A stretch of 64,000 nt of DNA from the NCBI GenBank assembly GCA_002104945.1, contig MCFH01000048.1:1-64000 (forward strand). The letters are read 5' to 3'. Each line of letters starts with the position of its first letter. Within the stretch, counting starts at the first letter, position 1. The notes beneath the pieces are model-generated. The model had not been told where the DNA came from, made no database searches, and saw only the letters and a program-made list of their open reading frames with translations. The position numbers and the translations under genes are program-made. Shown here one piece after another: positions 3,875 through 54,088 of the stretch. Origin of the DNA: Piromyces finnis finn (taxonomy: Eukaryota; Fungi; Neocallimastigomycota).

Positions 3875-6800
3875 CTTTGACACGTTCTATAATGTCGGTA
3901 ATAAGCGGTATTGGGTAGGAATTACGTATCGTTACAGAATTGAGTTTTTTATAATCAAACAAACTCTAAGTACCATCTTTCTTTTTCTGAAACACCCTGG
4001 ATATCCTGCGGTGATTCGGATGGTCTAATAAAGCCTTTTCTAAATTTTCCTTGATATACTCTTCTAAAACTTTTGATTCTTCTTCTGATAAAGGATAGAT
4101 GGGACCATAATGAAGAGTAGCATCTTTTTCTAGTACTATTTTGCAATCTGTAATTCTATGTGGCGGTAGTTTATCAGCTTCTTGTTTGCTGGAAAACTTT
4201 TTGCCCAAATTCGATAGGGTCTGGAATATCCTCAATAGTATGTTCTTCTAAATTGCTTACTTCTTCTGGTTTTTCGGACAAAAAAGTATGAATTAAATAA
4301 TTATAATTATATCCATCATAATTATTTTTATTTAATATAACTTTTTAGAAAATTTGGAACGTTTAGCTTTGAATTTGTGGAATCGACCATTTTCTTCTTC
4401 TTAAAGGTTTTGGATCTGAAATAAAAATTATGAATTTTATTTTTTAAATTATAAAAAGTAGCGGAATATTTTTTATCATTATTTGCACCTGTAGAAGTGG
4501 TAGGTGTAGTATTCTTATCATTTCTATTATAAGAAATGAATTTTTCTAAATTTAAAAACTTAGTAGCATGCTTCATATTGAATTTCTTTTTGTTAAAATC
4601 ATATTTTAAATTTGAATATAAATATTTTTATTATAATTATAATGAATTTCATATTTGGACATGAATATATTTCCAAATAATAAATCTGTCGGAATATAAT
4701 CCGCAAGTAAAAATTTTTCTTTGAAATTGATGAAATGAAATTTATTGTTGATAAATAGTTTTAACTGGAAGTTTAGGTTGATATATTCATCAAGTTCAAT
4801 TGAAGTACCACTGATACCTTGTACAGTGATAACATTATTCATTTTGTGAGAATGTAATTGTAATGTACGTAATAGTTTGTACGACATAAATTACAATAAG
4901 ATCCACTATCTAATAGTGATGTACATATAGTTTTATTATGTATTTTATTTGTACCTCCATTATTGGATAATATATATGTATTAAAAGTAAAGAATGTTGA
5001 AGGTAACGTATTATCTTTATTGATAGTGGGAAAAGTATAGTTTAATATTTTTATATTCGAGTGGTGATGGGACTTCAATGGAAGTCCTTTATTTAGTTTT
5101 TTGAACTAATTTTTTGAGCCTTATAATTGTTGTTATAGTAATTATTATTATGTTTTTGGAAGTTATTGCTATTGTTATTGTTATTGTTATTGTTGTTGTA
5201 TGGTCTGTGGTGGTTGAAATGTGAATTTCTTTTCTTGTTAGATTTGGAACTGGAAGACTGGGGTAATCTTATTCTTTGTAGAAAGAGAACTTTCAATCAA
5301 AATACATCTAGTTATAATGGACTCCATAGTGGTTGGAAAATACCTCCATCTTTTCAATTTCTTCCCTGATATTTTGGATGTAACCCATTGTAAAAGATTA
5401 AAGATAATGCTTCTTCATTCCATTTAAATTGTTGTGAAAGAGAGCGGAATTCTTCGATATAATCATTTATTTTACCATATTGTTGTTTTAAACGAATTAT
5501 TTTGATTTTAGCTATCTTGTAACTAGCAACATTGGAGAAAGCAATTCTTAATCCATCCAATAATTCTTGCATGGTAGCTGGATAAATATTATCCTTGTAC
5601 TTGGCAAGATACCAATTTCTAGCAGCATCACGAAGACGGGATTGTACAAAATTAATTTTTGTTTCTTCTGGTAAAGATCGATTTGGTAGAGTTTTAAAAG
5701 TATCTTCACATAATTGACAAAATAGATCGGTCTCACTAGTCTTACCGGAAAAACATACCTGGATCTGGGACTTGAGTAATTGGAGTAGCAAAACGACCTC
5801 TCATGATAACATCATGATCTAAGTCAAATCTTGTTGAAGTAGATTCATCATCTCTAAAGGCAGTAGGTCTTGGAGTAGCTATCCTATCATAGTTGGTATG
5901 TAACAATGGATGTTCATCTTCATTCTGAGTAACTTGACTATTATTCATACTGGTTAATACTCCCATGATTTCATTTAAACGATTGTTCACATCATTGGAA
6001 AAATTTTGAAAATCTTCACGGAAAACCAAATTTTCATTGATACCCTCAATGATATATTTGGCAGTCTGAGTAGCATCCTCTCTAAGTTGGTTTACCTCGT
6101 CTGGGAAGTTAGGAACTGGAGTGAACATTCTAAAGTAGCCACTAAACAGCGGGTAAAGATTATTGTTAAGTTTTTTGGATTTGGTTATGCGGCCAGGTCA
6201 GAATGTTATCAATTATATAGTAGATATGTTTTTTAAGAAATTAAATTTAAATATAAAATAACCCTTTAAACTTCCAAATGAGAAATTAATATTTATTCTT
6301 TAGAATAACTTTTTTTATAAAATTTTATTTATTTATTAATAATAATATAAATGATAATATATTTAATAACTATATAATTAAGATTATAACTATAATCTTT
6401 ACAAAGAATTAAAATCGAATTCAATTCATTCTATTTTATATTCTTTTTTCAGATTATTAAATTGATGAAAATAAAGTATTACATGTAATATGTTAATAAT
6501 ATAATAAGATTGTTTGTTTGTCTGTTTGTTTTGTCATGACATAAAATAAAATAAACATATGATTAATCATTTAAACACTTGATCCATTAACCTATTTTAT
6601 AATAATTAAAATTATTTAATTTATAAATGTTAACTGTTACACCTAAATGGTTTAGTTCTATTTTTAGTAACAGTCACTATCATTAATTAAATTAATATAA
6701 TTAGAATTTCTATTGATATCTTTTTAATTTTCGTCAAGTCATAAGAAATGTCTATGATCCATACTTGATATCATATTAATTTTAATTTACTTATTAAAAT

Positions 6801-7158
6801 CTTCAAATGATCATATCTTCCTTAAATGACCAGTTAGAAGGACCGCGATTGTACCAAAATGTAGCTTTTTCCTTAAGCTTTCTAATAAACCTGGTTTCAT
6901 AGCCGTAGCACTTACAGCCGTAGCGATCGTTTTTGGCGAGTTACACCTTGTTTCGTGTTTGTTTATTTTTGGTTAAGGGTTATAGTGTATTGATATTAAA
7001 TTTTTTGAAATCATAACCCTTTCACTGAATCAAAATTTAAAAGGTGACTTTTAAAGGTGTTTTAAAATAATTATTGGGATTATTTAATTCTAATTATTAT
7101 GTTTAATTAATTATAGATATTATCTGAATTTGTTTTAAATCCAGTTAATATCTTCACA
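3875..7158 (-). mobile_element. 3'-truncated, frameshifted Ty3/Gypsy element, family B (5' LTR, gag, protease, start of RT)
   Basis: LTR 6164-7158 (TGTTAAG...TTCACA; TSD-bounded solo copy at 39173-40176). Fragments: gag (FVQSRLRDAARNW), protease (LLDSGS), RT start (LPPHR..CKI; DYKKLNSVTIRNSYPIPLI across indels). Confidence 0.9.
3880..6128 (-). pseudogene. Broken gag-pol of family B
   Basis: ORF pieces 5742-6128, 5354-5791, 5093-5296, 4839-5078, 4606-4887, 4328-4576 and 3966-4235 join by frameshifts. Confidence 0.85.
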
Positions 7159-7159
7159 A

Positions 7160-7196
<37 letters not shown>

Positions 7197-7216
7197 AATT
7201 CATAATTTATAAAATT

Positions 7217-7712
7217 TGTAAAAGGTTTATTATAATATTAGTTAATAGGTTATTAAATTAGTTAATTAAGTTAGTTATTACCTCTCTATACGAGTTAATA
7301 ACTAAATAAAGTTTTATAAAAAATAATAAAAGAAGGAAAATAAATATTATAACACTAAAATAAATATAAACACTTATATAAATATTTTATGAAATAACTT
7401 TTACTTAAATAATTATATTTTAATTATATCTTTTATTTATTAATTATAATTATCTACATTAATTATTATTATAGTTATTAATTTACTTTAATACTAACGC
7501 TAAAGTATTTAACGTTAGTTTTGACTATACTATTTAACTATATGAGTTTATTTTCTTTACCACTTGATTGGGTAAAGCAAATAAACTTCCTATTTAATTA
7601 ATAACCATTAATATATGGTTATGCATATATTTGGCCAATAAATGGTGACCAGAATATATGGTTTCAATTGAAATATTTGTGGGCAAACTTATGGCCACAA
7701 ATATTTCTTACA
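7217..7712 (-). mobile_element. Solo LTR, family A
   Basis: TGTAAAAGG...TCTTACA, near-identical to 26770-27264 and 33874-34368. 5-bp TSD AAATT at 7212-7216 and 7713-7717. Confidence 0.95.
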
Positions 7713-7724: not shown

Positions 7725-7796
7725 GGAGGGTTGGCGCAACGGTAGCGCGTCCGCCTCCAGAGCGGAAGGTTGGGTGTTCGAATCACTCACTCTCCA
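7725..7796 (+). tRNA. tRNA-Trp (CCA)
   Basis: Cloverleaf: acceptor GGAGGGT/ACTCTCC, D stem GCGC, anticodon arm TCCGC-CTCCAGA-GCGGA, TTCGAAT loop. Followed by a T run. Confidence 0.97.
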
Positions 7797-8788: not shown

Positions 8789-8860
8789 TGGAGAGTGAGT
8801 GATTCGAACACCCAACCTTCCGCTCTGGAGGCGGACGCGCTACCGTTGCGCCAACCCTCC
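8789..8860 (-). tRNA. tRNA-Trp (CCA), identical convergent copy
   Basis: Exact reverse complement of 7725-7796, with its own T-run terminator. Confidence 0.97.
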
Positions 8861-8872: not shown

Positions 8873-9489
8873 TGTCAAAAAGCGATTTTTTATTAAAGAA
8901 AAGTGTGGTAAGCACACTAGTTATATTAATTAATAAATATAATACGCTTTCCTATTGAAGGCGTAAAGCTAATAATATTTATATAAAGAAATTTAAATAA
9001 TATTTTTATTTTAGCAATAACTTAATATCAGCATATATTAAGTTATTAAAAATATTAAAATTTTTAAAGTTTTAGGTTTTATAGGAGTTTATAAATTTTA
9101 TTAACTTTAGGTTAAAAAATTACTAACGCTAAAGCTTCGTAATTTTTGTCAATTTTTGTTCTTTTTATACATGAACAATTTTAATTATTACATTTTTTAA
9201 TTTTAATTAATTATTGTCTAATTATAAAATATTTAATTTTTATAAATTAATAATTAATATAATTATTGTAAATAGTTAATAAATTTAAAATAAAATTTTT
9301 AATAATAAAATTTTAATAATTTTAAAAATTTAATAATTTCAAATATTAGAAATTTTATACTTTGAAATTTTTTAATAAAAATTTAAAAAATAAATTTTTT
9401 CAAATTTTCAAATTTTCAAATTTTAAAAAAATTTTTAATTTTTTCCATGTGTCCAAATTTTTTAAATTTTTATATATGTTATTGTGACA
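8873..9489. mobile_element. Solo LTR, family D (related to A)
   Basis: TGTCA...TGACA termini and 5-bp TSD AAATT. Shares TACTAACGCTAAAG with family A. Inverted partial copy at 12889-13415. Confidence 0.9.
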
Positions 9490-9496
9490 AAATTTT

Positions 9497-11022
9497 TGAT
9501 AAAGAATGAAATTTATAAATAGTGAATTAATAGAATAGCTGATTTTAATGTCACGAATACTAGTGAAATTACAATTTCAAGATCACTTGGAATTGTGAAA
9601 TCACTTATGAAAATTCAAAATCAACAAATATTTTATTTTCAAATAAATTATAAAATTTTATTAAGAAATATTTAAAAATTTAGAAAAGGTTAAAATATGA
9701 CCTTAACCCTTAATAATTTTTATAATAAATAACTTTAACCCTTATCGTTAAAATGGAATAAGAAAAAACACGCGTATCTCCTCAACGAATGACGATTTTT
9801 GAATAATAATATTTTGGTTATAATTACGTTCGTTAGAAAGCCACGCTCGAGACAAACAACATATCTTAAAATCAGGTCAATATCTCTGCTGGTTCACGAG
9901 ATATTCCAATTTAAAGATATTTTGTTAGCAATGATTAATTGTTTATTCAGAGAATGATCACCCCTGATATATCAAACATAAATCATTCACTCAAAGTATA
10001 AAAAATTATTGTTTAATTAAATTAAAATTATTTTCCGGAACTAATTAACTTTATTTTATAATAATTATTTCAATAACATAATTTATAATCTTTGAACTAG
10101 AGGATTATAATTATTAATATTATATTCAATGAATTATATTATAATTAAGAAATAATTAATATTATAAATATATAAACAATAGTTATTTTTAATAATTAGT
10201 AGTAAGTCTTAAGTTTAGCCTTAGTATTATAAAATATATTATGAATATAATCATGTACTAAAAAGTTATTTTAGTATTAAATGTAAAATTACAAATAGTA
10301 TAAATAGTTTAGAATAGTTTTATGAATTAAATCTTTGTAAAGATTATTATCTTATTAATACTTAATAAGTATTACTATTAAATAATCTTATTATTATATA
10401 TATTCTTTAAATAAAATAAAAAGGAATTATTTTAACTATAATACATAATATAATTATTCATTTATAAATCAATTAAGATTATTTTAATAAAACATTTTTT
10501 TTTCTAACCTAGTTATCTTTTAACCTTTTATTTAATTTGATATTTTAATATTAAATTATAAGTTTAGTAAAACTTTTACATTTAAAATTATATAAATTAA
10601 AATAATAGTAAATAATCAAAATAATATAAAATATAAATGTTTAATTAAATTTTAAAAATGTAAAATAGAAACAACTTTTGTTTATAAACAAACTTAAATG
10701 TAATTATTTATTATAATTAGAAATAGAAAATATTATTTTTAAAGATTGTTACTAATTAGCCAGGAAAATTAGAATATTTTAAAATTATAATAAATTAATA
10801 TATATTTTTTTTTATATAATACATAGCGAGATGTATTATATATTTATTTTAAATAAATAAACTAATATTATAAAACAAGATGTGTTTTTAAAACTTTAAA
10901 TTTTATTTATAAATTATATAAAACTTGTAGAATGAGCAAGTAAAAATAAATCATTCAAATACACACCAAATATACCACTTTCTAAGCTTATTTAGAATTA
11001 AGGTATATTTGAACGTGTGTCA
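9497..11022. mobile_element. LTR-like unit L (possibly composite)
   Basis: TGATAAAG...GTGTCA flanked by TTTT on both sides. No second copy in the window. Confidence 0.5.
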
Positions 11023-11028
11023 TTTTTG

Positions 11029-11819
11029 TGTAAGAAATAATAATTATTTGATACATAATTAATATTTCTTAGTTAAAATCATTAATTATTAATCATTAAT
11101 TAATGTTATTAATATTAGTTTATTTAAATAATTATTCTTATTTAAATTTATTTTAATTATTTATTTTCACTTAATTTTAATATCTTAAATTACATTTAGC
11201 CATTTAATTATATTATTCATTAATATTTTATTTAATATTTTTATTAATTATATTTATGCATTTAATTAATTAATTAATTACTTTTATTTAACTTTATATT
11301 TTTATCAAATATATTTTATTTATTTAATTAATTACTTTAAAATAATTATTCATTGTTTAGGAATCGATATTTTAAGGTTTTTTCCAATTTCTAAAATAAT
11401 TGGTTTTACTTAAAATATACGATGATCAATATGTATAGAATGTTGATCGAACTTTGTTTAGGTTTTTCTTCTAATCTTTTCCTAAACAAAAAATTATTTT
11501 GTTAAGATTAGATAAAATTTTAATTTAAACTTTAAATTTATTAAATAATATAAATAAGATTCTTGATTCTCTTCTAAGGAATCAAGAGTTATTATTATAA
11601 GAAACAAATTATAATAATAAAAGTGTTTTTAATTTTATTTTACTTAACTTAGTTATAATAAAACATATTAACTTATTAAAGTGTAAAATTATTTCTACTC
11701 TTATAATAAACTCGAACTTAAAGATAAGTATTAATATTTATTTTTTTTTTATTCTCAATTTATCAATAAATTGTAGTTAATAATTCTATTATATAATAAT
11801 TTATAATGGAATTATTACA
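11029..11819 (+). mobile_element. Solo LTR related to the 47886-54000 element
   Basis: TGTAAGAA...ATTATTACA with 5-bp TSD TTTTG. Internal blocks are collinear with 47886-48716, including AGAGTTATTAT. Confidence 0.88.
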
Positions 11820-11822
11820 TTT

Positions 11823-12297
11823 TGATACAGTAGAAAATATTATCTTAATTCTATAAATGAATATAGAAAGTGATAATATTTGTATCTAAAATTTAATAAA
11901 TAAAAATAAATAAGAAAATAAAAATAGAATAAATGATTTTTATACTTGTTCATTTGCAAGTGTTAGTTAGTTTTTAATATAAAATGTTATTTTATTTAAT
12001 TATAAAATTATTATATTATCATATTATTTAATAACTCTAGTATTATTAAATAATTAAAATTTAATACATCTAGTATGTATTATAAATGTTGTAAAATAAA
12101 TATTGTTTTATTAAGTATAAATATCTAATTTTTCTCTCTTGGATAATTAGTAACCATAATATATAAATTTAATATAACTATATCTAATTTTTATGGATTA
12201 TTAGGAACATCTTTTAAAATAAAATAATTCTATTACTATTTATATAAAATTATTATTTTAAAGTATAAATATAAACAAATATAAACTATTTAATTTA

Positions 12298-12328
<31 letters not shown>

Positions 12329-12881
12329 TTTACATTTATAATTTTTAATTTAATAATTTTATACAAGTTAATTATTTTAATTTTTAACTATCTGTGTTTT
12401 AATATTATTATTATTATTATTATTATTATAAATTCATAATTTATAAATTTAATTATTTATCATGATATAAAAATAATATGTGACTTGAGCATATTATTAT
12501 ATTAGTAATTTTTCCTAATATTAAATTTATATAGATTTATTATAATATTAATTATTTCTACAATGTATAAGAATATAATGTAAATGTACGACAAATGTAA
12601 TATCATGTAATGTAAAAGAGCATTGTAAATGAATGATCCATATAGTTCCAGCCTTATAATTGGTCAATTAATTATTAAGTAAGCCTCATTAGTATAAATA
12701 GACTAGAATAAATATTATTAAAAAGGGCTTCTTGTTTTAGTTAGAATTTTAATATTTGACAACGACAGAACGTTTTAGTATTTAGACAGAATAGAAATAT
12801 TGGAACGTTATAAATAAAATTATTAATAAAATATATATTAATTAAAGTTTAATTCTTTCTACATAAAATTAACCCGTATCA
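11823..12881. mobile_element. LTR, family C
   Basis: TGATAC...CGTATCA, homologous to 1801-2340. The right TSD is not resolved. Confidence 0.6.
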
Positions 12882-12888
12882 ATCAATT

Positions 12889-13415
12889 TGTCACAATAAC
12901 ATATATAAAAATTTAAAAAATTTGGACACATGGAAAAAATTTATTTTTTAAATTTTTATTAAAAAAATTCAAAGTATAAAATTTCTAATATTTGAAATTA
13001 TTAAAATTTTTTTAAAATTATTAAAATTTTATTATTAAAAATTTTATTTTAAATTTATTAACTATTTACAATAATTATATTACTTATTAATTTATAAAAA
13101 TTAAGTATTTTATAATTGAACAATAATTAATTAAAATTAAAAAATGTAACAATTAAAATTGTTCATGTATAAAAAGAACAAAAATTGACAAAAATTACGA
13201 AGCTTTAGCGTTAGTAATTTTTTAACTTAAATTTAATAAAATTTATAAACTCCAATAAAACCTAAAACTTTAAAAATTTTAATATTTTTAATAACTTAAT
13301 ATATGCTGATATTAAGTTATTGCTAAAATAAAAATATTATTTAATTTTCTTTATATAAATATTATAAGCTTAACGCCTTCAATAGGAAAGCGTATTATAT
13401 TTGTTAATTAATATA
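12889..13415. mobile_element. Truncated inverted family D LTR
   Basis: Reverse complement of ~8925-9489. Confidence 0.85.
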
Positions 13416-44600: not shown

Positions 44601-45719
44601 TATCTCTGTGAAAGTCTTCTCGCCAATTGTGATTTTTAGTTTATATATATCCGTATTCGATGAAGTATTGGAATATGCCTGAAATATTGTCTCTGTAATA
44701 TTTCCTACTGGCTGCTTGTGAATCCTAAATTTGCGGAGTGCTGACTTTGTTATCATATTAACGCTGGCACATGAATCTAAGAATATTTCAGCCTCCACAT
44801 CTTCTACCTTCCCGCGGACTTTGACAACTTTATGTTCTCCAAGCAAGGTGACAGCATTTGTTACTGCATTTTTGAATTTTGGTGTTAATTTCAACTTCTG
44901 GGCAAATGCTGTGCGGAATTTTGGGAACAGGTCTAATAAATTCACAAGTTCTGTTACCACTTCTGTTGAAGCTACTTCTTTAACTAAATCATCTACCTTG
45001 AACTCTTCAAAACCATCCATTAGACGTATGTGTTTTTCAATATTTAAAATTTGTTCTTGCGGTGGGTTAGGGTTTATTTTATCTATTTCCTTCCTTTCTT
45101 GTTTCTTCATTTCAGCATTTCTTTCTTCCCGATTTTTCTTCTTTACATTCTCTATTCTTTTATCATTTAGATAGGATACATCCAAGTGTTCTAACTTCTC
45201 TACTTTGTTTAATTTTCTATTTTCCTTAGGAGTTGTTGCTTTGCTCTTATCATTCTTGCCCAATTCTTCATTTATATCATCCAACTCCTCTTCCATTTCT
45301 TCTTTTCCTATGGTTTCTATTAACTTATTTTCATCTTTGGTTGATTTTCCATCAGAATCTATTGTTATAATTTCAGAAGTGTCCAAGTTCATCTCCTTAT
45401 CATTATTATTTATATAATTCCTTCTCTTATCTAATTGCTCATTATACTTCATAGCAGCAGTTTTAATAGGCATAGGATTTCGCTGTAGTTTATTCTCATG
45501 CATTCTCTTTATTTGGCTGGTTGTTTCCTTGTGCGCATTTTTAGCTTTGCTATTTGTGTCTTTTGATTTCTTCGTTGCAACCAAGGTTATAGACGAAGGC
45601 TCTCGGTAATTATTATTTGAGGTATTAGTATTAATTATGGTTTTATCTACCGTTGGTTGTACCACCGATAGATTGGTTTGTTTACTGGGAGTTGTCCTTC
45701 TCCCAGAGTTTAGTTTAAA
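41637..45719 (-). CDS. pol: Pol (protease, RT, RNase H, integrase) by -1 frameshift
   Basis: FLDSCAS, MCVDYRRLN, YIDDLI, TDASRNG, HHCC and D-D-E. No chromodomain. Confidence 0.95.
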   Translation of the reverse strand, partial: FKLNSGRRTTPSKQTNLSVVQPTVDKTIINTNTSNNNYREPSSITLVATKKSKDTNSKAKNAHKETTSQIKRMHENKLQRNPMPIKTAAMKYNEQLDKRRNYINNNDKEMNLDTSEIITIDSDGKSTKDENKLIETIGKEEMEEELDDINEELGKNDKSKATTPKENRKLNKVEKLEHLDVSYLNDKRIENVKKKNREERNAEMKKQERKEIDKINPNPPQEQILNIEKHIRLMDGFEEFKVDDLVKEVASTEVVTELVNLLDLFPKFRTAFAQKLKLTPKFKNAVTNAVTLLGEHKVVKVRGKVEDVEAEIFLDSCASVNMITKSALRKFRIHKQPVGNITETIFQAYSNTSSNTDIYKLKITIGEKTFTEIFRVIEKDDIFDILIGIDSLKRNRFSLNFVDDNLYYIDKNNSPMKIADLHYDVNLQESKGEDSEEETIEETPMLITVAMSTQNEGKEGTLETKENIINNIVNKIPKDIRDVVRKLFDKFNHVIAVKTDDLSRTKLLPHRIRLKPNSFPFKQRAYRLSKVQADALKEELTKLIKNKLIEPSHSSWSSPVVLVPKKNGKYRMCVDYRRLNECTIKDSYALPLIDDILCYVGKKAVLTTMDLFSGYHQVPMYPEDEDLTCFTTIYGNYNFKVMPFGLCNAPATFQREMNRIFFDLIGKCVFIYIDDLIVFSNTMEEHIRDLSKVFKILRENGLRINIEKCHFFQEEVELLGHVLSKEGIKPIPGKTQVIMNWLPPKNVSQLRSFLGAVSYYRKFIDKFAQYAKPLFKLLKKDEEFKWSPEANNSFEILKLRLIEAPILMPPDFDKPFKIRTDASRNGIGGVILQIDEDGMEKPLHFVSRTLNKSEENYSVTDLEGTAAYYCSRKFKHYIVGNTLETELITDHKPLVGLINNSEPTNNRHLKWVTTFSILKIKVLYEEGKKNVIADALSRLTSKEESQLAPRPSHNKQTINVIVENNSNTTTNNKISENNNQYKNINDFINRKLITMDGIQYYKSNGKLRRIIDDDEEKFRLIEAAHSIGHEGIYKTYHRLKKEFYWKGMNNDIKIYIKCCPRCQQFKPQKSNLFVESIPTKPGLPFSRVGLDLVGPLPITNKGNKYIIVLVDYLTKWVEAEALENIESDDVIDFLKRVFSRHGIPEVLVTDNGPQFRSDKTKAFLDLHDVYVQYVSTYHPASNGEVENRNKEIIKYLKLLGNEEDEWDEILPSALWALRTCKNEITKFSSFELLYGRKDLQPFELSLMKDRNKYENEEEYWIQKFVRHHKWIQEAIDNIETANKLWSDRRRQSKRMRAAYKPGDLVLVKVFNRRKLDPYFTGPLKIIKKEFNTVTVCDPISGEIAERNIHLKNIIPYFSEL

Positions 45720-46744
45720 AGCCCCTTTTCTTCCATTTCGGCAAGTTGTTTAAAAGTATATGGACATTCTATACGTTTGTGTCCATTTTGTCCACATCTG
45801 AAACATTTTATATCGGAATTTCTTTCATCAATCTCCCTTGGAATAGCATTGGTTGGTTCTATCAGGGATACCCTTTTTTCCGCATTTCTTGTTGTAGAAT
45901 AAGATTTATTCATGCCTTGATAAGGGATTAAACCCATTCTACTATTATTATCATTCTGTTGATTTACATAACCATTGGTGTTGCTCCAATTAGACTGTCC
46001 TCCATAAACTCTGCGGTAGCTAGTCCTAGTTCTATTGAAATATGGATATCTAAAGTTCTGGTTAATATTCTTCCTGTCGTAATATGAATTATGCGAATCC
46101 TCTTTATTATCATTCATAAGTCCAGTATAAATCGGATGATTTAATAGAACATTATCACTTTGGGCAGCTAAAGTAACATTCCTTGTTCCTCTCCTTTGGT
46201 TAACTTGTTCCTTGTTTTTCTCTTTAATTTCTCTCTCAGTATTTTCAGCTCGTTCAGCAATTTTGTAAGCTTCTTGTAGGTTCTCACAATCAGACATTCC
46301 TACCTGGGAGCACGGATAGACACGAGCACTAATAGAGTCTCTATATTCCTTCACTGTTATTAATTTCTGATATTCCCTACTTAGATTATGATACAAGTTT
46401 CGATATCTATAATTAAACTTTTTTATAGTTTCTCCTTCCGCAATATTCATGTTTCTAAGTAGGGTCCATTTATCTCCCTCAGTAATCTTCATATCTTCTT
46501 CGATGGCTATTTGTATTTCTTTAAGTGATGGGTAATGGACTTCATTATTTCTTCTTATTTTTAACCTTCTTACAACTTCTTTGGTATCAGACTCTACTGC
46601 GGCCATAGCCCAATTATACACTTGTCTAGGCTCAATTAAATCATAGAGATCCAAAAAGTCGTTCATATCCACTACCCATTCCCATACATTCTTCCCATAG
46701 TTATCAAGTTTGGGAACCTCTTTACGTATAGTAGTTAAATCCAT
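45710..46744 (-). CDS. gag: Gag with CCHC zinc knuckle
   Basis: 344 aa with CFRCGQNGHKRIEC. Ends at TTTAAAC. Confidence 0.92.
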   Translation of the reverse strand: MDLTTIRKEVPKLDNYGKNVWEWVVDMNDFLDLYDLIEPRQVYNWAMAAVESDTKEVVRRLKIRRNNEVHYPSLKEIQIAIEEDMKITEGDKWTLLRNMNIAEGETIKKFNYRYRNLYHNLSREYQKLITVKEYRDSISARVYPCSQVGMSDCENLQEAYKIAERAENTEREIKEKNKEQVNQRRGTRNVTLAAQSDNVLLNHPIYTGLMNDNKEDSHNSYYDRKNINQNFRYPYFNRTRTSYRRVYGGQSNWSNTNGYVNQQNDNNSRMGLIPYQGMNKSYSTTRNAEKRVSLIEPTNAIPREIDERNSDIKCFRCGQNGHKRIECPYTFKQLAEMEEKGLLN

Positions 46745-47133
46745 TTCTCAAAGATGAACTAATATTACTCTTATTATTGTTTGTCTGTTTATTATATCGC
46801 GTGATTTCTAATTGTATATATTTTTATATTTTATTATTATTAACACGCGTATTAATTATAAATTTATGTTATTTTTTATATATAAATATAAACTATTTTA
46901 TTTTAATAAATTTAATTCTTAGAACTACTTATATTATCGACTTTGGTGTAGAAGGCCTTTAGCTAAGAAGTTTTTCATTCAACAGCCGCGATCTACCCAA
47001 AGCGGTTGGTGGAAATATGTGTATTCTTCAAATTAAATAATTAAAATAATATAATTTAATAGTTATATATAATTTATTATTATTATTATTATATATATTA
47101 ATTTATTATTATTATTATTATTATTATTATAAA

Positions 47134-47173
<40 letters not shown>

Positions 47174-48752
47174 TTTTTTGTATAATCTCTATCTATTACT
47201 CATCTATTTTCATAAATTTGCTTGTTGTACGCCCGGATTCTCCACCAAAAACTTGGTACAGAATTTTATTATAAGTACCTTTTTCTTTATTGTTTGGGAC
47301 ACTACAACAGTTATAAATAACAAATTTATATTCTAGATGAATATTTTTTGATTATATATTATTTTATTATTTTGTTTATTATTTTATTATTTTTATTACA
47401 AGCTTTATTATTTATAAGTATTATTTATTATTATTTTATATTATCATTTGTTTTAAAAATAGGTATAATCTTAGAAAATAAACTAATATTATTATTAATT
47501 CCTTCACTAAATCTAACAATAATATTATTTATTCTTCTATTATTATCACCTTATCTTTATTTTATTTATAATATAACTAATATAAACTAACTAAAACTAA
47601 CTAAAAACTAAAAACTCTTCTTTTCTTTTTTTTATATATATACGCGTCTTTCTCTTCCTTATATAATTATATTTTTATCATCCTTATATTAAATTATAAA
47701 AAGTTTATTTTACTTTAATAAATTATTTATAAGTTATTAATTTAATTTAATTTACCATTCTTATTATTACTATCGTTATATAAATTTATTAAATAAAAAT
47801 ATTTAAATCCATATATATTATAAGGGTTATTTCATTTACCAAATATATGGATTTATTGCATTTTTCTGAATGTGGTGTACCAAAATGTAAGAATTAATAA
47901 TTATTTTTTGTATAAATTAATTCTTATTTAATTATTTTTTAATTATTAAATTAATTATTTATTTAAACTATTAGCATACATTCATTTAAATTACTATAAA
48001 CATTTATCTATATTGATATTAATTATTCATTTACTTAATTTAAAATTTATTTAATTACTATATTAATTATTTATTTATTTAATTTAGTAATATATTTAAA
48101 ATAATAGTAAACATTCATTTATTTTTTAATTAATAATTTTTGTATTACATTTTATAAGAAACATTATATATTTTATTTTACGTTTGTATTTTATATTTAT
48201 GTATCGTATCTTGAAATAACTTATAGAAACAATTAGAAAATATAAATACATATTAGGACAATCGGATATTAAGGTTTTTCCGAATTTTAATCGGTTTTAC
48301 TTAATATTACGATGATTGATATATTAGTTATCAATCGAATATCTTTTTAGGTTTTTCTTCTAGTCTTTTCCTAAAAAGATTATTTGTTAAGATTAGAAAT
48401 TCTTTATTAAACTTTAAATTATCAAAAAATTATAAATATAAGGACTCTGGAATTCCACTAAAGAATCCAGAGTTATTATTTTAAGACAATTATAATAAAT
48501 AACCCTTTCAAAAACTATATTCATAAAAAATATTTACATTAAAGATAGTCTTAATATTTTGTGTTTGTTATTATAATTCACTTATAATAAACTCTTTAAG
48601 ATAAGTATTCATTTTTATTTACTATTAAGAAACTTCTCAATTTAATAATACATATTACGATTTGTATTATTATATTGTAGATAATAATTATTATTAAATA
48701 TATAATAATTATTACAATAATAACTCTACTGTAGATAGATAAATTTTAAGTA

Positions 48753-48910
48753 GCCAATTAGATTAAAAAAAAAATTTAAATTACCAATTAAATAGTTTTA
48801 AAAAAAAAAAAAAATTAAATTGCCAATTAAATAGTTTAAAAAAAAAAAAAAAAAAAAAAATTAAATTTCCAATTAATTAGTTAAAAAAAAAAAAAAAAAA
48901 AAAAAAATTT
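48753..48910 (+). repeat. About four degenerate CCAATTA..TAG-poly(A)-TTAAATT units in the element 3 leader
   Basis: Directly visible, with variable A-tract length. Confidence 0.7.
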
Positions 48911-49097
48911 AAATTTTAAGACAAATAATAATAATAATTAAATATAGTGATAATATTAAAAGACATATAGTTTATTTTCTTATAATAGTGATTTTAAATA
49001 TACAAATATAAGTATTCAAATATATAATATAAATTTTATTAATAAAAAAAATTTTTTTTTAGTGATATATATTATATAACAATTATATTTAAATATA

Positions 49098-52000
49098 ATG
49101 GAACTCAATGGTATTGATAAGGACTCTGTTGAAGTTAATGCTGATGAATTCCCTAAGAGCACTGTGACTTCTAAATTAATCGAAGCCATGACGGAATTCA
49201 TCCCCACTTTCTTCTCTCCGAACGGTGTATTATCGAAGGAAAAGGAAGCTAACACTAGAGAGAATGTCCTAGAGACATTAATCCAAAGCGAAGAATTCTT
49301 TAAGGATCATCCTAAATCATTTACTAGCGACGAAGAAAAAAATGCGTTTGTTATAAATAAACTTAATGGAATTGCTAGAAAGTGGGGTTTATCCCTTTTG
49401 ATCGATGGAACGCTTAGGACTCTCAGTTTTAATGAATTTAAAAAACTACTCCTTAATAACTTCGATACCGGAGACGAACGTAAGCAAAAATATATGCTTA
49501 TAAATAAGTTATGGAACCTAAAGCAGCTTCAACTTGGGAAAGTTACTGAATATACCATTGAATTTCGAAGGTTGGCAAGTAGAATCGGTTGGCCAGATGA
49601 CGTTTTTATTGACATCATTGGTAAAGGACTCGTTGATCGAGTACGTGAGGAATACGATAAAATGGATAAGCCAAATAGTTTATTTGAAGCTACAAATATT
49701 ATAATTAACCTTGACAAAAAATGTTTTTTGGAAAATTGCATTAGAAACAAACATACCGAAATGCAAAAGAAAGGCAGCAAATCATTTGGAAGAAAGAAAG
49801 CTGAATTAAACAAAACAGAAAATGGAAACCCATTTCATAGACATAAAAAGAGTAAAGCAAAACATAGTATTCTTTCTGCTACTACTAATTACACTCCTGA
49901 TAAACAGAACACAATAACTACTATGTGTTTTTTGAACTTAGGAACTAAAAACTTAAAAATAAACTTTCTTATTGACTCAGGGTCTGCTAGAAGTTTTATT
50001 TGCAAAACCTTCGCGAATGCAAATAAAATTCCTACTGTAGGGTTGACATCCCCAATCAATATACATTTACCCAATGGTAAGAGTATGATTATTAAGCAGG
50101 CAACCAAACCATTAAGATTAAGAATTATGGATCATGAAGAAAAATATGAATTCTGCATCGGGAACTTGCTTCTTCAGGGAATCTCAGGAATACTTGGACG
50201 TGATTGGCTTTCCATTCATAATCCTTTCTTAAATTATAAGACTAACAAAATATACTTTTTGGAGAAGTACTGCGGTAAACACTGTCCTTCAGCAAAAGGC
50301 AATAAGTTTGTATACCATTCTGATGAAATCTCCGCTCCTATGGTAAATAGTTTGAATAATGACTCAATTATCCCGGATTCAATCTCTGAAGACGAACTGT
50401 ACGACCAGGATGTTTGTGCTACTATCTTAGAATTAGACAGCTTTCAAGATAATGCTGAAAATAATAATATTCAAATCCTAAAAAAATATTATTATGACTT
50501 GACGACAGTGTTTCAGAAGCAAAAGGCCGACGTACTCCCCCCTCATAGGGACTACGATATGTCCATAGACTTAATTCCAGGTGGACAGTTATATTTTGGT
50601 CCGATATATTCTCTTACGATCGATGAACAAAAAACTTTAAGAGAATATGTCAAAGAGAATTTGAACAAAGGCTTTATTCGGAAGTCGAAGTCACCAGCCG
50701 GAGCTCCTGTACTTTTTGTAAAGAAACATGATGGAAGCCTTCGTTTATGTGTCGATTATCGTCGACTAAACGCAATTACAGTTAGAAACAGTTACCCTAT
50801 TCCTAGAATAAACGATATGATTGAATCTTTCAAAGGCGCTTCAATATTTACCAGATTGGATTTAAGATCTGCGTACAACCTTGTACGTATTAAAGAAGGC
50901 CATGAATATCTCACGGCTTTTAGAACTCCTATCGGTCATTACGAATATCTTGTGATGCCCTTTGGTCTTCGTAATGCACCATCCGTTTTTCAAAGATTCA
51001 TACAAGATGTTCTCGCGGAAGTTTTAGGTTCATTTGCCCAGGTGTACTTGGACGACATTATAATATATTCTCCTAACCTTAAGGATCATGTTAGTCATGT
51101 TCGAACAATTCTTAAAGCCTTAATCGATAATGGGTTATATGTAAAATTAGAAAAGTGCGATTTTCACGTAAAGGAAACCACCTTTTTAGGCTTTACTGTC
51201 TCTACTAATGGACTCCTAATGGATAAAAACAAAGTGAAATCTATATTAGAATGGCCTACACCAAAAAACATTAAAGAACTTCAAAGCTTTCTAGGACTCT
51301 GTAATTTCTACAGAAGGTTTATAAAAAATTTTGCTGAAAAAATGGACCCACTTCGCAAACTCTTGAAAAAAAATTCTGTGTTTAATTGGGATAATATCGC
51401 TGCTACTGCTTTTTCAAAGCTCAAAGAATCCTTTTTAACTAATGAAATACTCATTTTTCCTGATCCAGAGAAGGAATTTGTGGTAGAAACAGACGCCAGT
51501 GATTTTGCAATAGGATGTATCCTTTCACAGGTAAGTAATAATGATAATCTCTTACACCCCATTGCATTTTATTCTCGTTCATTAAATAACGCTGAGTGTA
51601 ACTACACCATATATGACAAGGAACTCCTTGCCATTATTACCGCGTTCGATACATGGAGGCACCACTTAGAGGGTGCTAAATTTCCTGTCCAAGTTATTAC
51701 TGATCATAGAAACCTTTTATACTTCAAAAAACCACAACTATTAAGTCAAAGACAAATCCGCTGGAGCATGTTTCTATCAAGATTTGACTATAGAATCTCT
51801 TATAGACCTGGTTCCAGGGGTGGAAAACCTGACTCCTTATCAAGGAGATCAGACTACAAGATAAAGCATGATAACGACTGCCATAGAATAATTGAAGATG
51901 ATGTGTTTTGCTGTACTACAGATGATAACATTAGTCATTTAATTCAATTCCAAAAAACAGATAAATTTTGCAAGGAAACTTTTCAAAAAATTAAAGACAA

Positions 52001-53144
52001 CTCTGGCAAGGTCAAAAGTTCTCTTTTCACCGTCATCAATGGTGTGCTCCATTTTCAAAATCGTATTATCGTTCCCTCACCTCTCAAGGCAAAAATACTT
52101 AAGTCATTCCATGATTCACCAATTAATGGCCATCAAGGGATTGATAAGACCCTAGAAAAAATTAAACGTTACTATTGGTGGCCAAATTTGAAAAAGGACG
52201 TTATAAATTATGTCCTTTCATGCGATATATGTTGTAGATGTAAGACCCGCAGGCACAAACCGTATGGGAAAATCCTGCCACTGCCCATTCCAAATAAACC
52301 TTGGGAAGTTATTGGTGTAGATTTTATTGTCTATCTACCTAGTTCGCAAAATTGCACATGTATCATGGTAACTGCTGACCATTTAACAAAAATGGTTCAC
52401 TTAGTGCCTTGTGCTGATGTCCCTTCTGCCGACCTTACTGCCAAACTCCTTTTACTTAATGTGTTCCGTTACCATGGATTTCCGAACATGATCATTTCTG
52501 ATCACGGTTCCCAATTTTCCTCAGAATTTTGGACATCTTTATGTTCATCTCTACATATAAAACCAAGATTAGCCACAGCCCATCACCAACAGTCAAATGG
52601 CCAGATTGAAAGGATAAATTCGGTCATAGAACAATATCTTAGATGCTACTGCTCCTCTGCTCAAAGTGATTGGTGTTTCTATCTACCTCTCTGTGAACTT
52701 GCGTACAATAACTCACTTCACAAATCCTTAGGCATATCACCGTTTTTTGCCAATTATGGGTTTCACCCAAATTTTGTTATTGAATCACCTCCATCGTTAC
52801 TCAAGGACAATGCTTCGAATCTCACTAGAGACTGGTCGTCTCATTTCAATGCTCTACAACAACACTTAAATAAGGCAAAAGAAGATTTTAAAAAATACGG
52901 TGATTACAGGAAATTGAGTGGGCCAAAATTTAAAGTTGATGATCTAGTATGGTTGAAAAGATACTACTTTACCAACGAACCCGCTAAAAAACTTTCATCT
53001 CAATATCTTGGTCCTTTTAAAATCGTCGAGGAGAGAAATAGAATGAATTACCGGCTTGAATTACCTGAAAACCTACATATTCATCCGGTATTTCATATCT
53101 CACAATTGGAACCTTACACAAAGAGAAATCCAGAACTGGAATAA
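49098..53144 (+). CDS. pol: Single-ORF Gag-Pol polyprotein
   Basis: 1348 aa. LIDSGS, LCVDYRRLN, YLDDII, ETDASD, HHCC, D-D-E and HPVFHISQL, then a stop with no chromodomain. Confidence 0.96.
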   Translation: MELNGIDKDSVEVNADEFPKSTVTSKLIEAMTEFIPTFFSPNGVLSKEKEANTRENVLETLIQSEEFFKDHPKSFTSDEEKNAFVINKLNGIARKWGLSLLIDGTLRTLSFNEFKKLLLNNFDTGDERKQKYMLINKLWNLKQLQLGKVTEYTIEFRRLASRIGWPDDVFIDIIGKGLVDRVREEYDKMDKPNSLFEATNIIINLDKKCFLENCIRNKHTEMQKKGSKSFGRKKAELNKTENGNPFHRHKKSKAKHSILSATTNYTPDKQNTITTMCFLNLGTKNLKINFLIDSGSARSFICKTFANANKIPTVGLTSPINIHLPNGKSMIIKQATKPLRLRIMDHEEKYEFCIGNLLLQGISGILGRDWLSIHNPFLNYKTNKIYFLEKYCGKHCPSAKGNKFVYHSDEISAPMVNSLNNDSIIPDSISEDELYDQDVCATILELDSFQDNAENNNIQILKKYYYDLTTVFQKQKADVLPPHRDYDMSIDLIPGGQLYFGPIYSLTIDEQKTLREYVKENLNKGFIRKSKSPAGAPVLFVKKHDGSLRLCVDYRRLNAITVRNSYPIPRINDMIESFKGASIFTRLDLRSAYNLVRIKEGHEYLTAFRTPIGHYEYLVMPFGLRNAPSVFQRFIQDVLAEVLGSFAQVYLDDIIIYSPNLKDHVSHVRTILKALIDNGLYVKLEKCDFHVKETTFLGFTVSTNGLLMDKNKVKSILEWPTPKNIKELQSFLGLCNFYRRFIKNFAEKMDPLRKLLKKNSVFNWDNIAATAFSKLKESFLTNEILIFPDPEKEFVVETDASDFAIGCILSQVSNNDNLLHPIAFYSRSLNNAECNYTIYDKELLAIITAFDTWRHHLEGAKFPVQVITDHRNLLYFKKPQLLSQRQIRWSMFLSRFDYRISYRPGSRGGKPDSLSRRSDYKIKHDNDCHRIIEDDVFCCTTDDNISHLIQFQKTDKFCKETFQKIKDNSGKVKSSLFTVINGVLHFQNRIIVPSPLKAKILKSFHDSPINGHQGIDKTLEKIKRYYWWPNLKKDVINYVLSCDICCRCKTRRHKPYGKILPLPIPNKPWEVIGVDFIVYLPSSQNCTCIMVTADHLTKMVHLVPCADVPSADLTAKLLLLNVFRYHGFPNMIISDHGSQFSSEFWTSLCSSLHIKPRLATAHHQQSNGQIERINSVIEQYLRCYCSSAQSDWCFYLPLCELAYNNSLHKSLGISPFFANYGFHPNFVIESPPSLLKDNASNLTRDWSSHFNALQQHLNKAKEDFKKYGDYRKLSGPKFKVDDLVWLKRYYFTNEPAKKLSSQYLGPFKIVEERNRMNYRLELPENLHIHPVFHISQLEPYTKRNPELE

Positions 53145-54017
53145 CAATGTTTTTTTTAAAAGGGAGCAATGTAAGAATTAATAATTATTTTTTGTATAAA
53201 TTAATTCTTATTTAATTATTTTTTAATTATTAAATTAATTATTTATTTAAACTATTAGCATACATTCATTTAAATTACTATAAACATTTATCTATATTGA
53301 TATTAATTATTCATTTACTTAATTTAAAATTTATTTAATTACTATATTAATTATTTATTTATTTAATTTAGTAATATATTTAAAATAATAGTAAACATTC
53401 ATTTATTTTTTAATTAATAATTTTTGTATTACATTTTATAAGAAACATTATATATTTTATTTTACGTTTGTATTTTATATTTATGTATCGTATCTTGAAA
53501 TAACTTATAGAAACAATTAGAAAATATAAATACATATTAGGACAATCGGATATTAAGGTTTTTCCGAATTTTAATCGGTTTTACTTAATATTACGATGAT
53601 TGATATATTAGTTATCAATCGAATATCTTTTTAGGTTTTTCTTCTAGTCTTTTCCTAAAAAGATTATTTGTTAAGATTAGAAATTCTTTATTAAACTTTA
53701 AATTATCAAAAAATTATAAATATAAGGACTCTGGAATTCCACTAAAGAATCCAGAGTTATTATTTTAAGACAATTATAATAAATAACCCTTTCAAAAACT
53801 ATATTCATAAAAAATATTTACATTAAAGATAGTCTTAATATTTTGTGTTTGTTATTATAATTCACTTATAATAAACTCTTTAAGATAAGTATTCATTTTT
53901 ATTTACTATTAAGAAACTTCTCAATTTAATAATACATATTACGATTTGTATTATTATATTGTAGATAATAATTATTATTAAATATATAATAATTATTACA
54001 CAAAAAAATAGTAAGAA

Positions 54018-54088
54018 GCATTGATGGTTTAGTGGTATAATTACCGCCTGCCACGCGGTAGACCCGGGTTCGATTCCCGGTCAATGCA
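54018..54088 (+). tRNA. tRNA-Gly (GCC)
   Basis: Acceptor GCATTGA/TCAATGC, anticodon arm ACCGC-CTGCCAC-GCGGT, CCGGG-TTCGATT-CCCGG. Confidence 0.97.

What the first reader, a model, noticed from the sequence alone, without database searches (positions are those of the whole stretch)
6164..54088. Multi-family tRNA-targeted LTR retrotransposon system building polarised, chronological insertion stacks
Seen: all four tRNA genes have an LTR 12-17 nt from their 5' end, with further LTRs packed behind it and separated by only 3-7 nt. The 3' sides between the Trp pair (7797-8788) and after Gly carry no LTRs. Full-length elements with matching LTRs sit nearest the Arg and Gly tRNAs, and solo LTRs lie further out. 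Known: Ty3 (via TFIIIB), Ty1 and Dictyostelium DGLT-A/TRE5 target Pol III genes. Inference: each new element lands next to the tRNA and pushes older ones away, so the array records invasions in time order, like leader-proximal spacer acquisition. I am not aware of this being described for this lineage, but I cannot search the literature.
Basis: partly seen in the sequence, partly recalled or inferred. Interest (0 to 1): 0.92.

Follow-up and report, generated by a model that had tools for sequence, protein, structure and literature searches.

The report
tRNA-targeted retrotransposon stacks in gut fungus
In this anaerobic gut fungus at least ten families of virus-like jumping genes insert at a fixed spot a dozen bases in front of tRNA genes, each newcomer pushing older copies outward; the behaviour is known from yeasts and slime moulds but I found no report of it in this fungal group, and two families use a second fixed spot about 65 bases out.

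Summary
All four tRNA genes have an LTR end 12, 12, 12 and 17 nt from their 5' end. Further LTRs sit 0-8 nt apart behind it, and the 3' sides lack them.

Target-site duplications let both large stacks be peeled back insertion by insertion.

Support beyond the window:
- 20 tRNA-Arg loci, chosen only by tRNA score, were all occupied.
- Nearly all 36 tRNA-Trp genes and 3 of 4 tRNA-Gly(gcc) genes are occupied.
- The family-A LTR end lies 11-13 nt from at least 8 tRNA types.
- Two paralogous empty/filled site pairs show the insertions directly.
- An age proxy falls with stack rank (permutation p about 2e-4).

The elements are Ty3/gypsy retrotransposons of two deep lineages. The system is therefore a new member or variant of the known Pol III-targeting kind (Ty3, Tj1, DGLT-A), not a new principle. 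I found no report of it for Neocallimastigomycota.

- Families B and N1 use a second register at -64 to -67, always in one orientation.
- Each family has its own offset.
- Family A shows a strong orientation bias.
- A multi-family insertion hot spot lies inside family A's own leader.

Earlier notes of this scan had already recorded the second register and a tRNA-promoter mimic elsewhere in this genome.

The parts
7725..7796 (+). tRNA-Trp(cca), target gene
8789..8860 (-). tRNA-Trp(cca), target gene. It forms a tail-to-tail pair with the first Trp gene.
34381..34454 (+). tRNA-Arg(tct), target gene
54018..54088 (+). tRNA-Gly(gcc), target gene
7217..7712 (.). Family A solo LTR (496 nt), 12 nt upstream of tRNA-Trp+. 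It is 100% identical to at least 17 other genome copies.
7159..7216 (.). 58-nt end piece of an older LTR, cut off when B inserted in the second register
3875..7158 (-). 5'-truncated family B element. Its LTR is 6164-7158. Before the A insertion its end lay about 65 nt from tRNA-Trp+.
   Evidence: (93% to the internal part of B in L019)
1813..3878 (.). Older LTR remnants (M-like, G-like, I) at the far end of the Trp+ stack
8873..9494 (.). Family C solo LTR, 12 nt upstream of tRNA-Trp-
9495..10580 (.). 52-nt end piece of an older LTR (9495-9546) followed by a family N1 solo LTR (9548-10580). This is a second-register insertion.
10583..14153 (.). Older LTRs and fragments of the Trp- stack: F2-like 11140-11819, M pieces, C inverted 12908-13415, N2 13416-14153
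14154..20068 (-). Non-LTR (LINE-like) retrotransposon with a poly(A) tail of about 32 nt and TSD AACCTTATTTAA, inserted into the old LTR N2/N3. It is not part of the targeting system.
20069..22220 (.). Old end of the Arg stack: N3 plus an M-type end (20069-20620), H solo LTR (20625-21404), G solo LTR (21410-22220)
22224..26761 (-). Family D element (4.5 kb, gag plus a protease-like ORF only). Its 621-nt LTRs are 99.84% identical, its TSD is AATA, and it is rank 2 at tRNA-Arg.
26770..34368 (-). Family A full element. Its 495-nt LTRs are 100% identical, its TSD is AAAAT, and it lies 12 nt from tRNA-Arg. It carries a G solo LTR (32720-33505, TSD GAAT) in its leader.
34548..37033 (.). Oldest LTR remnants of the Gly stack: G fragment 34548-34899, I 35449-36495, and an E-type end just before 37034
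37038..40938 (.). Solo LTRs H (37038-37789), D inverted (37794-38414), G (38419-39172 plus 40177-40228, split by B solo 39173-40176 with TSD TAAAA) and K (40232-40938)
40943..47882 (-). Family E full element. Its 629-nt LTRs are 99.69% identical, its primer-binding site starts TGGTGGAGAATCC, and it is rank 2 at tRNA-Gly.
47886..54000 (+). Family F full element with a single 1348-aa gag-pol ORF. Its 831-nt LTRs are 100% identical, its TSD is CAAAA, and it lies 17 nt from tRNA-Gly.

Best explanation
The window is a set of Pol III-gene landing pads. At least ten families of Ty3/gypsy LTR retrotransposons (A, C, D, E, F/F2, G, H, K, M) integrate 11-17 nt upstream of the mature 5' end of tRNA genes. 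By analogy with yeast, where the start site lies about 10 nt upstream of the mature end, this is at or a few bp upstream of the Pol III start site. Each family has its own offset. Integration makes a 4-5-bp target-site duplication and leaves the internal tRNA promoter intact.

Because the site is re-created at every insertion, the next element lands between the last one and the tRNA. Older copies are displaced outward, collapse to solo LTRs and decay. The result is one-sided stacks that are roughly chronological.

Two further families (B, N1) use a second register 64-67 nt upstream, always in one orientation, and cut the then-proximal LTR 44-58 nt from its end.

Shown here: the positions, the TSDs, the order of insertion, the family diversity and the recent activity. 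Inferred: the integrases read position from the Pol III pre-initiation machinery (TFIIIB, placed by TFIIIC), as Ty3 integrase does.
For: Genome-wide evidence:
- There are 183 exact A-LTR ends. Of these, 27 are followed by a B box at 55-85 nt, against 0 for the control. At least 15 distinct sites lie beside Arg, Gly, Trp, Cys, Ser, Met, Glu and a Ser- or Leu-like tRNA, at 11-13 nt.
- Almost all 36 tRNA-Trp genes have an LTR-type ...CA end at 12-16 nt.
- 3 of 4 tRNA-Gly(gcc) genes are occupied and one is empty.
- All 20 tRNA-Arg loci picked by Rfam score alone are occupied.

Empty versus filled paralogs:
- An A2 element with TSD TATGA lies 11 nt from tRNA-Glu.
- A B element with TSD TATCA lies 66 nt from tRNA-Arg.

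Order of insertion:
- TSDs include the terminal bases of the older LTR.
- LTR-pair identity at rank 1 is 100, 100, 100, 100 and 98.8-99.4%. At rank 2 it is 99.84, 99.69, 99.26 and 99.74%.
- The age proxy gives a summed rho of -7.78 and a permutation p of 2e-4.

Element identity:
- All have Ty3/gypsy pol domains.
- The best solved relative is Ty3 Gag-Pol, 7q5b.
- There are two lineages, at about 30% identity to each other.

Inside the A leader, six families inserted at one spot with their offsets in the same relative order as at tRNAs. This points to one shared measuring mechanism.
Against: - No host-factor contact was tested.
- The Pol III start sites are not mapped, so 'at the start site' rests on the yeast spacing.
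- Ty3's chromodomain 'ruler' is not universal here. A has a chromodomain fold and B aligns to it, but F, E and K end right after the SH3-like domain and are equally precise.
- The sampled loci are biased. One tRNA family was fetched, many loci are on small repeat-rich contigs, and several are duplicates of each other.
- The age proxy is crude, and one stack (L020) runs the other way.
- At least one tRNA-Gly gene is unoccupied.
Confidence: 0.88

Rival explanations
1. Insertion is essentially random. Only copies beside tRNA genes survive, because insertions elsewhere in a gene-dense genome are removed by selection.
For: The genome has long gene-rich contigs and short repeat-rich ones. tRNA/TE islands could be tolerated 'safe havens'.
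Against: - Selection cannot give single-nucleotide registers (A at 11-13 nt at 15 or more sites), family-specific offsets, a second sharp register at 64-67 nt, fixed orientation, or intact abutting LTRs with 0-8-nt gaps.
- The downstream sides would be equally 'safe', yet they are empty.
Confidence: 0.03
2. The tRNA genes are cargo, not targets. The LTR-tRNA junctions were spread by segmental duplication, or the tRNA travels with the element.
For: Many loci are duplicates: L003/L004/L011, L006/L010, L007-9, and C56 matching the window. tRNA-Arg(tct) and tRNA-Trp each have about 35 copies.
Against: - The same LTR family abuts at least 8 different tRNA types with different 11-13-nt spacers.
- The same tRNA type is abutted by many families.
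- Each element has its own TSD.
- Empty and filled versions of the same site exist.

Duplication inflates the counts but does not create the pattern.
Confidence: 0.04
3. The targeting is real, but it is directed by something other than TFIIIB/TFIIIC. Candidates are a positioned nucleosome or histone mark read by the chromodomain, or a DNA-sequence preference for the A-rich spacer.
For: - A, and by alignment B, carry a chromodomain-like tail.
- The spacers and TSDs are A-rich: AAAAT, CAAAA, AATA.
- The second register at about -65 is close to where an upstream nucleosome edge could lie.
Against: - F, E and K lack the chromodomain and still hit the same register.
- The TSD sequences differ: TATGA, TATCA, GAAT, TACA.
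- AT-rich sequence is everywhere in this genome of 14-20% GC, yet insertions are only found in front of tRNAs and in front of a B-box-bearing site in the A leader.
Confidence: 0.1

Closest known systems
Ty3 of Saccharomyces cerevisiae (Metaviridae). It integrates 1-4 bp upstream of Pol III start sites through integrase-TFIIIB contacts (PMC5911963, PMC8632968).
   Same: - Ty3/gypsy gene order, and Ty3 Gag-Pol is the best solved relative (E 1e-103 to 1e-142).
- The register is a few bp wide, 11-17 nt before the mature tRNA.
- TSDs are 4-5 bp.
- The tRNA gene is left intact.
- Solo LTRs accumulate upstream.
   Different: - Pol identity is low (no value was computed), and the host belongs to a different phylum.
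- There are ten or more families, against one.
- Three of the five autonomous families lack any C-terminal chromodomain, which is Ty3's 'ruler'.
- Family A is about 10:1 orientation-biased, whereas the Tj1 paper (PMC4600332) implies that wild-type Ty3 has no fixed orientation.
- The A/B/F lineage has no tRNA-type primer site.
Tj1 (and Tj2-10) of Schizosaccharomyces japonicus. It is related to Tf1/Tf2, is self-primed, and integrates 1-10 bp upstream of tRNA start sites in a fixed orientation. tRNA and TE clusters lie at centromeres (PMC4600332).
   Same: - The A/B/F lineage shows the Tf1-type hallmark: 11-12 nt directly after the 5' LTR are complementary to an internal LTR site.
- It has an SH3_Tf2-1 integrase domain.
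- Several families are orientation-fixed.
- Many families co-cluster with amplified tRNA genes on repeat-rich contigs.
   Different: - A, B and N1 have their 5' LTR facing the tRNA (divergent), whereas Tj1 points the same way as the tRNA.
- No phylogeny linking these elements to Tj1 was made.
- Whether the clusters are centromeric here is unknown.
DGLT-A, TRE5 and NLTR-B of dictyostelid amoebae. DGLT-A inserts 13-33 bp upstream of tRNA genes, TRE5 at 40-54 bp and NLTR-B at 39-64 bp (PMC5006619, PMC5911963).
   Same: - Several unrelated families share tRNA genes as targets in an AT-rich genome.
- Distinct upstream registers coexist.
- Solo LTRs are common.
   Different: - The far registers in amoebae belong to non-LTR elements. 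Here the -64 to -67 register belongs to family B, a Ty3/gypsy element, and to N1, of which only LTRs were seen. Its spread is about 3 nt.
- No family that targets the downstream side (like Skipper-2 or TRE3) was seen here.

Membership tests
Ty3/gypsy (Metaviridae) LTR retrotransposons | Direct LTRs ending TG...CA that flank gag, protease, RT, RNase H and integrase in that order | tested here: met
   LTR pairs are 99.3-100% identical. Pfam gives the order RVP/Asp protease, RVT_1, RT_RNaseH, Integrase_H2C2, rve for A, B, E, F and K.
Ty3/gypsy (Metaviridae) LTR retrotransposons | Short target-site duplication, a primer site after the 5' LTR and a polypurine tract before the 3' LTR | tested here: met
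   TSDs are 4-5 bp: AAAAT, CAAAA, TATGA, TATCA, TACA, TATT, GAAT. The primer site is TGGTGGAGA.. in D, E, K and M. Purine-rich tracts precede the 3' LTR.
Ty3-like Pol III start-site targeting | Integration in a window a few bp wide just upstream of tRNA genes | tested here: met
   Distances to the mature 5' end are 11-17 nt, with A at 11-13 nt at 15 or more sites. The start site itself was not mapped.
Ty3-like Pol III start-site targeting | Integrase binds TFIIIB (Brf1, TBP) | not testable with these tools
Ty3-like Pol III start-site targeting | A C-terminal vestigial chromodomain of the integrase acts as a ruler | tested here: inconclusive
   - The A tail folds as a chromodomain: pLDDT 81-85; Z 5.8 and rmsd 1.4 A over 61 residues to the Rhino chromodomain; Z 5.5 and rmsd 1.7 A over 59 residues to the SUV39H1 chromodomain.
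- B aligns to the A tail.
- F, E and K end right after the SH3-like domain.
- Pfam's Chromo model does not match.
Tf1/Tj1-type self-priming elements | About 11 nt directly after the 5' LTR are complementary to a site inside the LTR, and there is no tRNA-type primer site | tested here: met
   A, A2, B, F and F2 have an 11-12-nt perfect complement that starts at the first base after the LTR. Only 0-7 of 300 shuffles reach this length. E and K do not show it.
Chromoviruses | A chromodomain recognisable by sequence at the integrase C terminus | tested here: not met
   There is no PF00385 hit even at E up to 10. Only fold-level and language-model similarity was found.

The most novel reading that the evidence does not exclude
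Two deep Ty3/gypsy lineages in an early-diverging fungus have each evolved, or retained from an ancient ancestor, single-nucleotide reading of the Pol III pre-initiation complex. Within one lineage a switch of contact surface created a second LTR-element register about 53 nt further upstream, with fixed orientation. In addition, family A carries an internal A-box/B-box mimic in its leader that recruits the same machinery and so acts as a landing pad for six other families.
Probability: 0.3. Interest if true: 0.7.

Novelty: new variant of a known kind. Interest (0 to 1): 0.52.

Why it matters
- **Wider taxonomic range.** The review table I read lists tRNA-gene targeting by LTR retrotransposons only for ascomycete yeasts and for Dictyostelium (PMC5911963). 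A rich and apparently active system in Neocallimastigomycota widens that range. It bears on whether Pol III targeting in Ty3/gypsy elements is ancient or repeatedly invented.
- **A natural comparison set.** The genome holds many related integrases, with and without a chromodomain. They have offsets that differ by single bases, two registers and different orientation rules. This could be used to find which integrase surface measures distance from TFIIIB.
- **A practical use.** The stacks give a relative time line of element invasions. They also mark tRNA/TE islands that may matter for assembly, for chromosome structure and for strain typing of these biotechnologically used fungi.

Tried and rejected
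- **Fetching more genome DNA.** I planned to fetch all 63 top tRNA loci and the flanks of all A copies. I used coordinate-only pattern searches instead.
- **Cross-species check.** Homologs of F pol at 59-71% identity occur in gut metagenome or transcriptome contigs and in an Orpinomyces gene model. The four contigs I fetched (4.6-9.4 kb) have no tRNA and no LTR pair. Targeting in other genera stays untested.
- **Rfam on the window.** It found no Pol III gene other than the four tRNAs. It found no tRNA at the hot spot in the A leader.
- **Pfam Chromo on the A and B tails.** No hit.
- **Reads.** Contigs from three runs that are only guessed to be RNA cover much of the F ORF at low depth with no or few differences. 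This is a weak hint of transcription. It gives no strand or start information and no empty-site evidence from other strains.
- **The 55-nt 'A end' next to N1.** I first thought it was part of the N1 LTR. I rejected this because N1 is preceded by equally short ends of four other families.
- **B at 97 nt in L015.** This is an outlier. It is explained by an indel relative to its paralog L003, where the distance is 66 nt.
Full report
**Source.** The window is the first 64 kb of contig C176 of a 56,455,805-bp assembly in 232 contigs. Earlier notes of this scan call the organism an anaerobic gut fungus. From memory, the size and contig number fit Piromyces finnis; I did not verify this. Intergenic GC is 13-20%.

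**Observation.** ARAGORN and Rfam agree on four tRNA genes. Self-comparison shows that about 45 kb of the window is LTR-retrotransposon DNA arranged in four one-sided stacks.

The stacks, listed from the tRNA outward:
- **Trp+ (7725):** A solo LTR at 12 nt, a 58-nt LTR stub, then a 5'-truncated B element and older remnants.
- **Trp- (8860):** C solo at 12 nt, a 52-nt stub, N1 solo, and at least five further LTR pieces up to 14153.
- **Arg (34381):** full A element at 12 nt, full D element, G solo, H solo, and the N3/M remnant.
- **Gly (54018):** full F element at 17 nt, full E element, K solo, G solo split by a B solo, D solo (inverted), H solo, and older remnants back to 34548.

The Gly stack is 19.5 kb long. 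Gaps between neighbouring LTRs are 0-8 nt. The space between the two Trp genes and the DNA after Gly have no LTR repeats.

**Order of insertion, read from the sequence.**
- The A element at Arg is flanked by AAAAT on both sides.
- F is flanked by CAAAA, and the left copy consists of E's terminal CA plus AAA.
- D's AATA includes G's last base.
- In L014, F2's TACA is the end of an A LTR.

Removing A, D and G in turn leaves the next LTR 15, 14 and 15 nt from tRNA-Arg. Removing F leaves E at 15 nt from tRNA-Gly. The spacers of each stack, minus one TSD per insertion, add up to one original spacer of about 15 nt. Each element therefore arrived when the element behind it was already there, and it landed in the same small window.

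**Beyond the window.** I took the 63 best Rfam tRNA hits in the genome and fetched 10 kb around the first 20, all tRNA-Arg(tct), with no knowledge of their surroundings.
- Every tRNA unit in these loci has a recurrent LTR end 11-24 nt upstream. This includes the dimeric Glu-Arg and Ser-Met units.
- 22 of 24 non-duplicate units, window included, have the end at 11-17 nt.
- Downstream, 20 of 25 units have no repeat boundary within 300 nt, and the rest show no register.

Genome-wide pattern searches gave the following:
- There are 183 exact A-LTR ends.
- Of these, 27 are followed by a B box at tRNA distance, against 0 for the reversed control. By inspection at least 21 are real tRNAs of at least 8 types, at 11-13 nt, at 15 or more distinct sites.
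- Of 36 tRNA-Trp genes, all but one ambiguous group of four copies show a known LTR end motif at 12-16 nt. One further duplicated group of seven has it at 24 nt.
- Of four tRNA-Gly(gcc) genes, three are occupied (offsets 14, 16 and 17 nt) and one on a large contig is empty.

**Direct empty/filled comparisons.**
- L002 and L007-L009 share flanks that are 98-100% identical. L002 reads old-LTR-end, TATGA, 6 nt, tRNA-Glu. The others have a 6.7-kb A2 element between two copies of TATGA.
- L018 and L019 are inverted paralogs on C176. L019 has a 7.5-kb B element between two copies of TATCA inside an M LTR, 66 nt from tRNA-Arg.

**A second register.** B and N1 never abut the tRNA spacer. They are always separated from it by a 44-58-nt terminal stub of whatever LTR was proximal at the time (ends of A, F2, M, G, C and D). 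This gives 64-67 nt to the tRNA in nine cases. The one outlier, at 97 nt, is explained by an indel.

In L020, N1 and B are stacked at this second site. All six B copies and all six N1 copies have the same orientation relative to the tRNA. A first-stage note of this scan on the same contig (s1-173529) had described such a register, and my data confirm it independently.

**Offsets and orientation.** Offsets are family-specific:

| Family | Offset from the mature tRNA 5' end (nt) |
|---|---|
| A | 11-13 |
| C | 12 |
| G, M | mostly 14 (outliers: G 16 and 22, M 24) |
| D | 14-16 (11 in one degenerate copy) |
| K | 14-16 |
| F/F2 | 15-17 |

- A is strongly orientation-biased. There are at least 21 sites with its 5' LTR facing the tRNA, against 2 the other way. 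The second pattern was longer, so the ratio is approximate. In the fetched loci the ratio is 6:1.
- D, G, C and F occur both ways.

**Age against rank.**
- LTR-pair identities of full elements are given under Best explanation. The four rank-1 pairs at 100% contrast with 99.26-99.84% at rank 2 or in the second register. Rank 3 and beyond is solo or fragmentary.
- As a proxy for solo LTR age, I used identity to the nearest non-partner, non-duplicated copy in the 264 kb held. This falls with rank in 10 of 11 stacks (rho -0.5 to -1.0). The summed rho is -7.78 and the permutation p is 2e-4. The proximal member is the younger one in 32 of 46 adjacent pairs.
- The proxy is crude, because sampling is limited and I chose the stack members. 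It supports rough chronological order, not strict order.

**What the elements are.**
- A, B, E, F and K encode protease, RT, RNase H and integrase in gypsy order. Ty3 Gag-Pol (7q5b) is the best solved relative.
- They form two lineages. A, B and F are 39-47% identical to one another, E and K are 43% identical, and the two groups are about 30% identical to each other.
- D (gag plus a protease-like ORF) and M (2.3 kb) are non-autonomous.
- D, E, K and M have a primer site beginning TGGTGGAGA, whose nine bases match the 3' end of tRNA-Trp.
- A, A2, B, F and F2 have no such site. Instead, 11-12 nt directly after the 5' LTR are complementary to an internal LTR site (0-7 of 300 shuffles reach this). 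This is the hallmark of Tf1/Tj1-type self-priming (PMC4600332).
- Relatives of F pol (59-71% identity) occur in gut metagenome or transcriptome contigs and in an Orpinomyces gene model.
- Many A LTRs are 100% identical across the genome. Runs that are possibly RNA hold identical low-depth contigs of the F ORF. Activity therefore seems recent.

**Mechanism.** Shown: position-specific integration upstream of Pol III genes. Inferred: the integrases dock on TFIIIB, positioned by TFIIIC, as Ty3 integrase does (PMC8632968).

In Ty3 a vestigial chromodomain after the SH3-like domain acts as the ruler. Here the A tail is predicted with pLDDT 81-85 as three strands plus a helix. It superposes on the Rhino and SUV39H1 chromodomains (Z 5.8 and 5.5, rmsd 1.4-1.7 A), and B aligns to it. 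F, E and K stop right after the SH3-like domain. A chromodomain is therefore neither necessary for the first register nor specific to the second one. The ruler must differ between families.

**A supporting oddity.** In the leader and gag start of A-type elements there is a hot spot. Of 43 genomic copies of the site, 6 are interrupted within an 8-nt window by LTR ends of six different families, the G LTR inside this window's A element among them. Their offsets stand in the same relative order as at real tRNAs: C 3; A, G and M 4; F 7; D 8.
- A perfect B box (GGTTCGAACCC) lies about 72 nt downstream, and an A-box-like motif about 34 nt downstream.
- Rfam and ARAGORN see no tRNA there.
- This fits the idea that the elements read the Pol III machinery rather than the tRNA sequence.
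- It resembles an earlier finding of this scan about a tRNA-promoter mimic in another element's LTR (s1-173540).

**Comparison and novelty.** The behaviour is that of Ty3, Tj1, Tca8, the Yarrowia elements and DGLT-A (PMC5911963, PMC5006619, PMC4600332). Six full-text searches found no report for Neocallimastigomycota or chytrids.

New here are:
- the host lineage;
- the number and depth of the families that share the target;
- single-base family offsets;
- a sharply defined register at about -65 used by B, a Ty3/gypsy element, and by N1 (only LTRs seen), in one orientation;
- unusually clean stacks.

The principle, and its consequence that new copies displace old ones, is expected from what is known.

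**Verdict.** The system is a new variant of a known kind, of moderate interest.

Noticed in passing
window 32640-32720 (minus strand), inside the A element; also the G solo LTR at 32720-33505: This is an insertion hot spot in the leader and gag start of A-type elements. Six of 43 genomic copies are interrupted within 8 nt by six different LTR families, with offsets in the same relative order as at tRNAs. A perfect B box (GGTTCGAACCC) lies about 72 nt downstream and an A-box-like motif about 34 nt downstream. No tRNA is called there. It may be an internal Pol III promoter mimic.
   Followed up: partly
window 14154-20068 (minus strand): A LINE-like non-LTR retrotransposon with an RVT_1 ORF of 766 aa, a poly(A) tail of about 32 nt and a 12-bp TSD (AACCTTATTTAA). 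It is inserted into an old LTR where the Trp- and Arg stacks meet. It has no copy in the 20 fetched loci and shows no sign of tRNA targeting.
   Followed up: partly
L002 9119-9274, L004 9120-9274, L006 694-848, L018 5968-6132: tRNA genes occur as tight dimers: Glu-Arg with a 9-10-nt spacer and Ser-Met with an 8-nt spacer. The insertions sit upstream of the first gene of the dimer. In L007-L009 the Glu gene of the dimer has a 10-nt deletion in its D-arm/A-box region.
   Followed up: partly
genome-wide: tRNA-Arg(tct) has at least 34 copies and tRNA-Trp has 36. Many lie on short repeat-rich contigs in duplicated blocks together with their LTR stacks. This may reflect tRNA/TE islands, haplotigs or centromere-like regions.
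   Followed up: no
L006 914-2000 and L010 919-2005: A single N1 solo LTR sits 65 nt from tRNA-Glu on one side and 65-67 nt from the divergent tRNA-Gly on the other, with only about 53-nt stubs of two different LTRs left. The best explanation is recombination between two N1 copies that deleted everything between them.
   Followed up: no
window 57310-57865: A 556-nt stretch is 100% identical to L017 1174-1729 (C176, about position 111.9 kb). It is not one of the LTR families and its nature was not examined.
   Followed up: no
window 22224-26761 and L017 6391-8677: Two non-autonomous elements have nearly identical LTRs: D (gag plus a protease-like ORF, 4.5 kb) and M (2.3 kb). Both share the TGGTGGAGA primer site with the autonomous E and K families, so they are presumably mobilised in trans.
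   Followed up: partly
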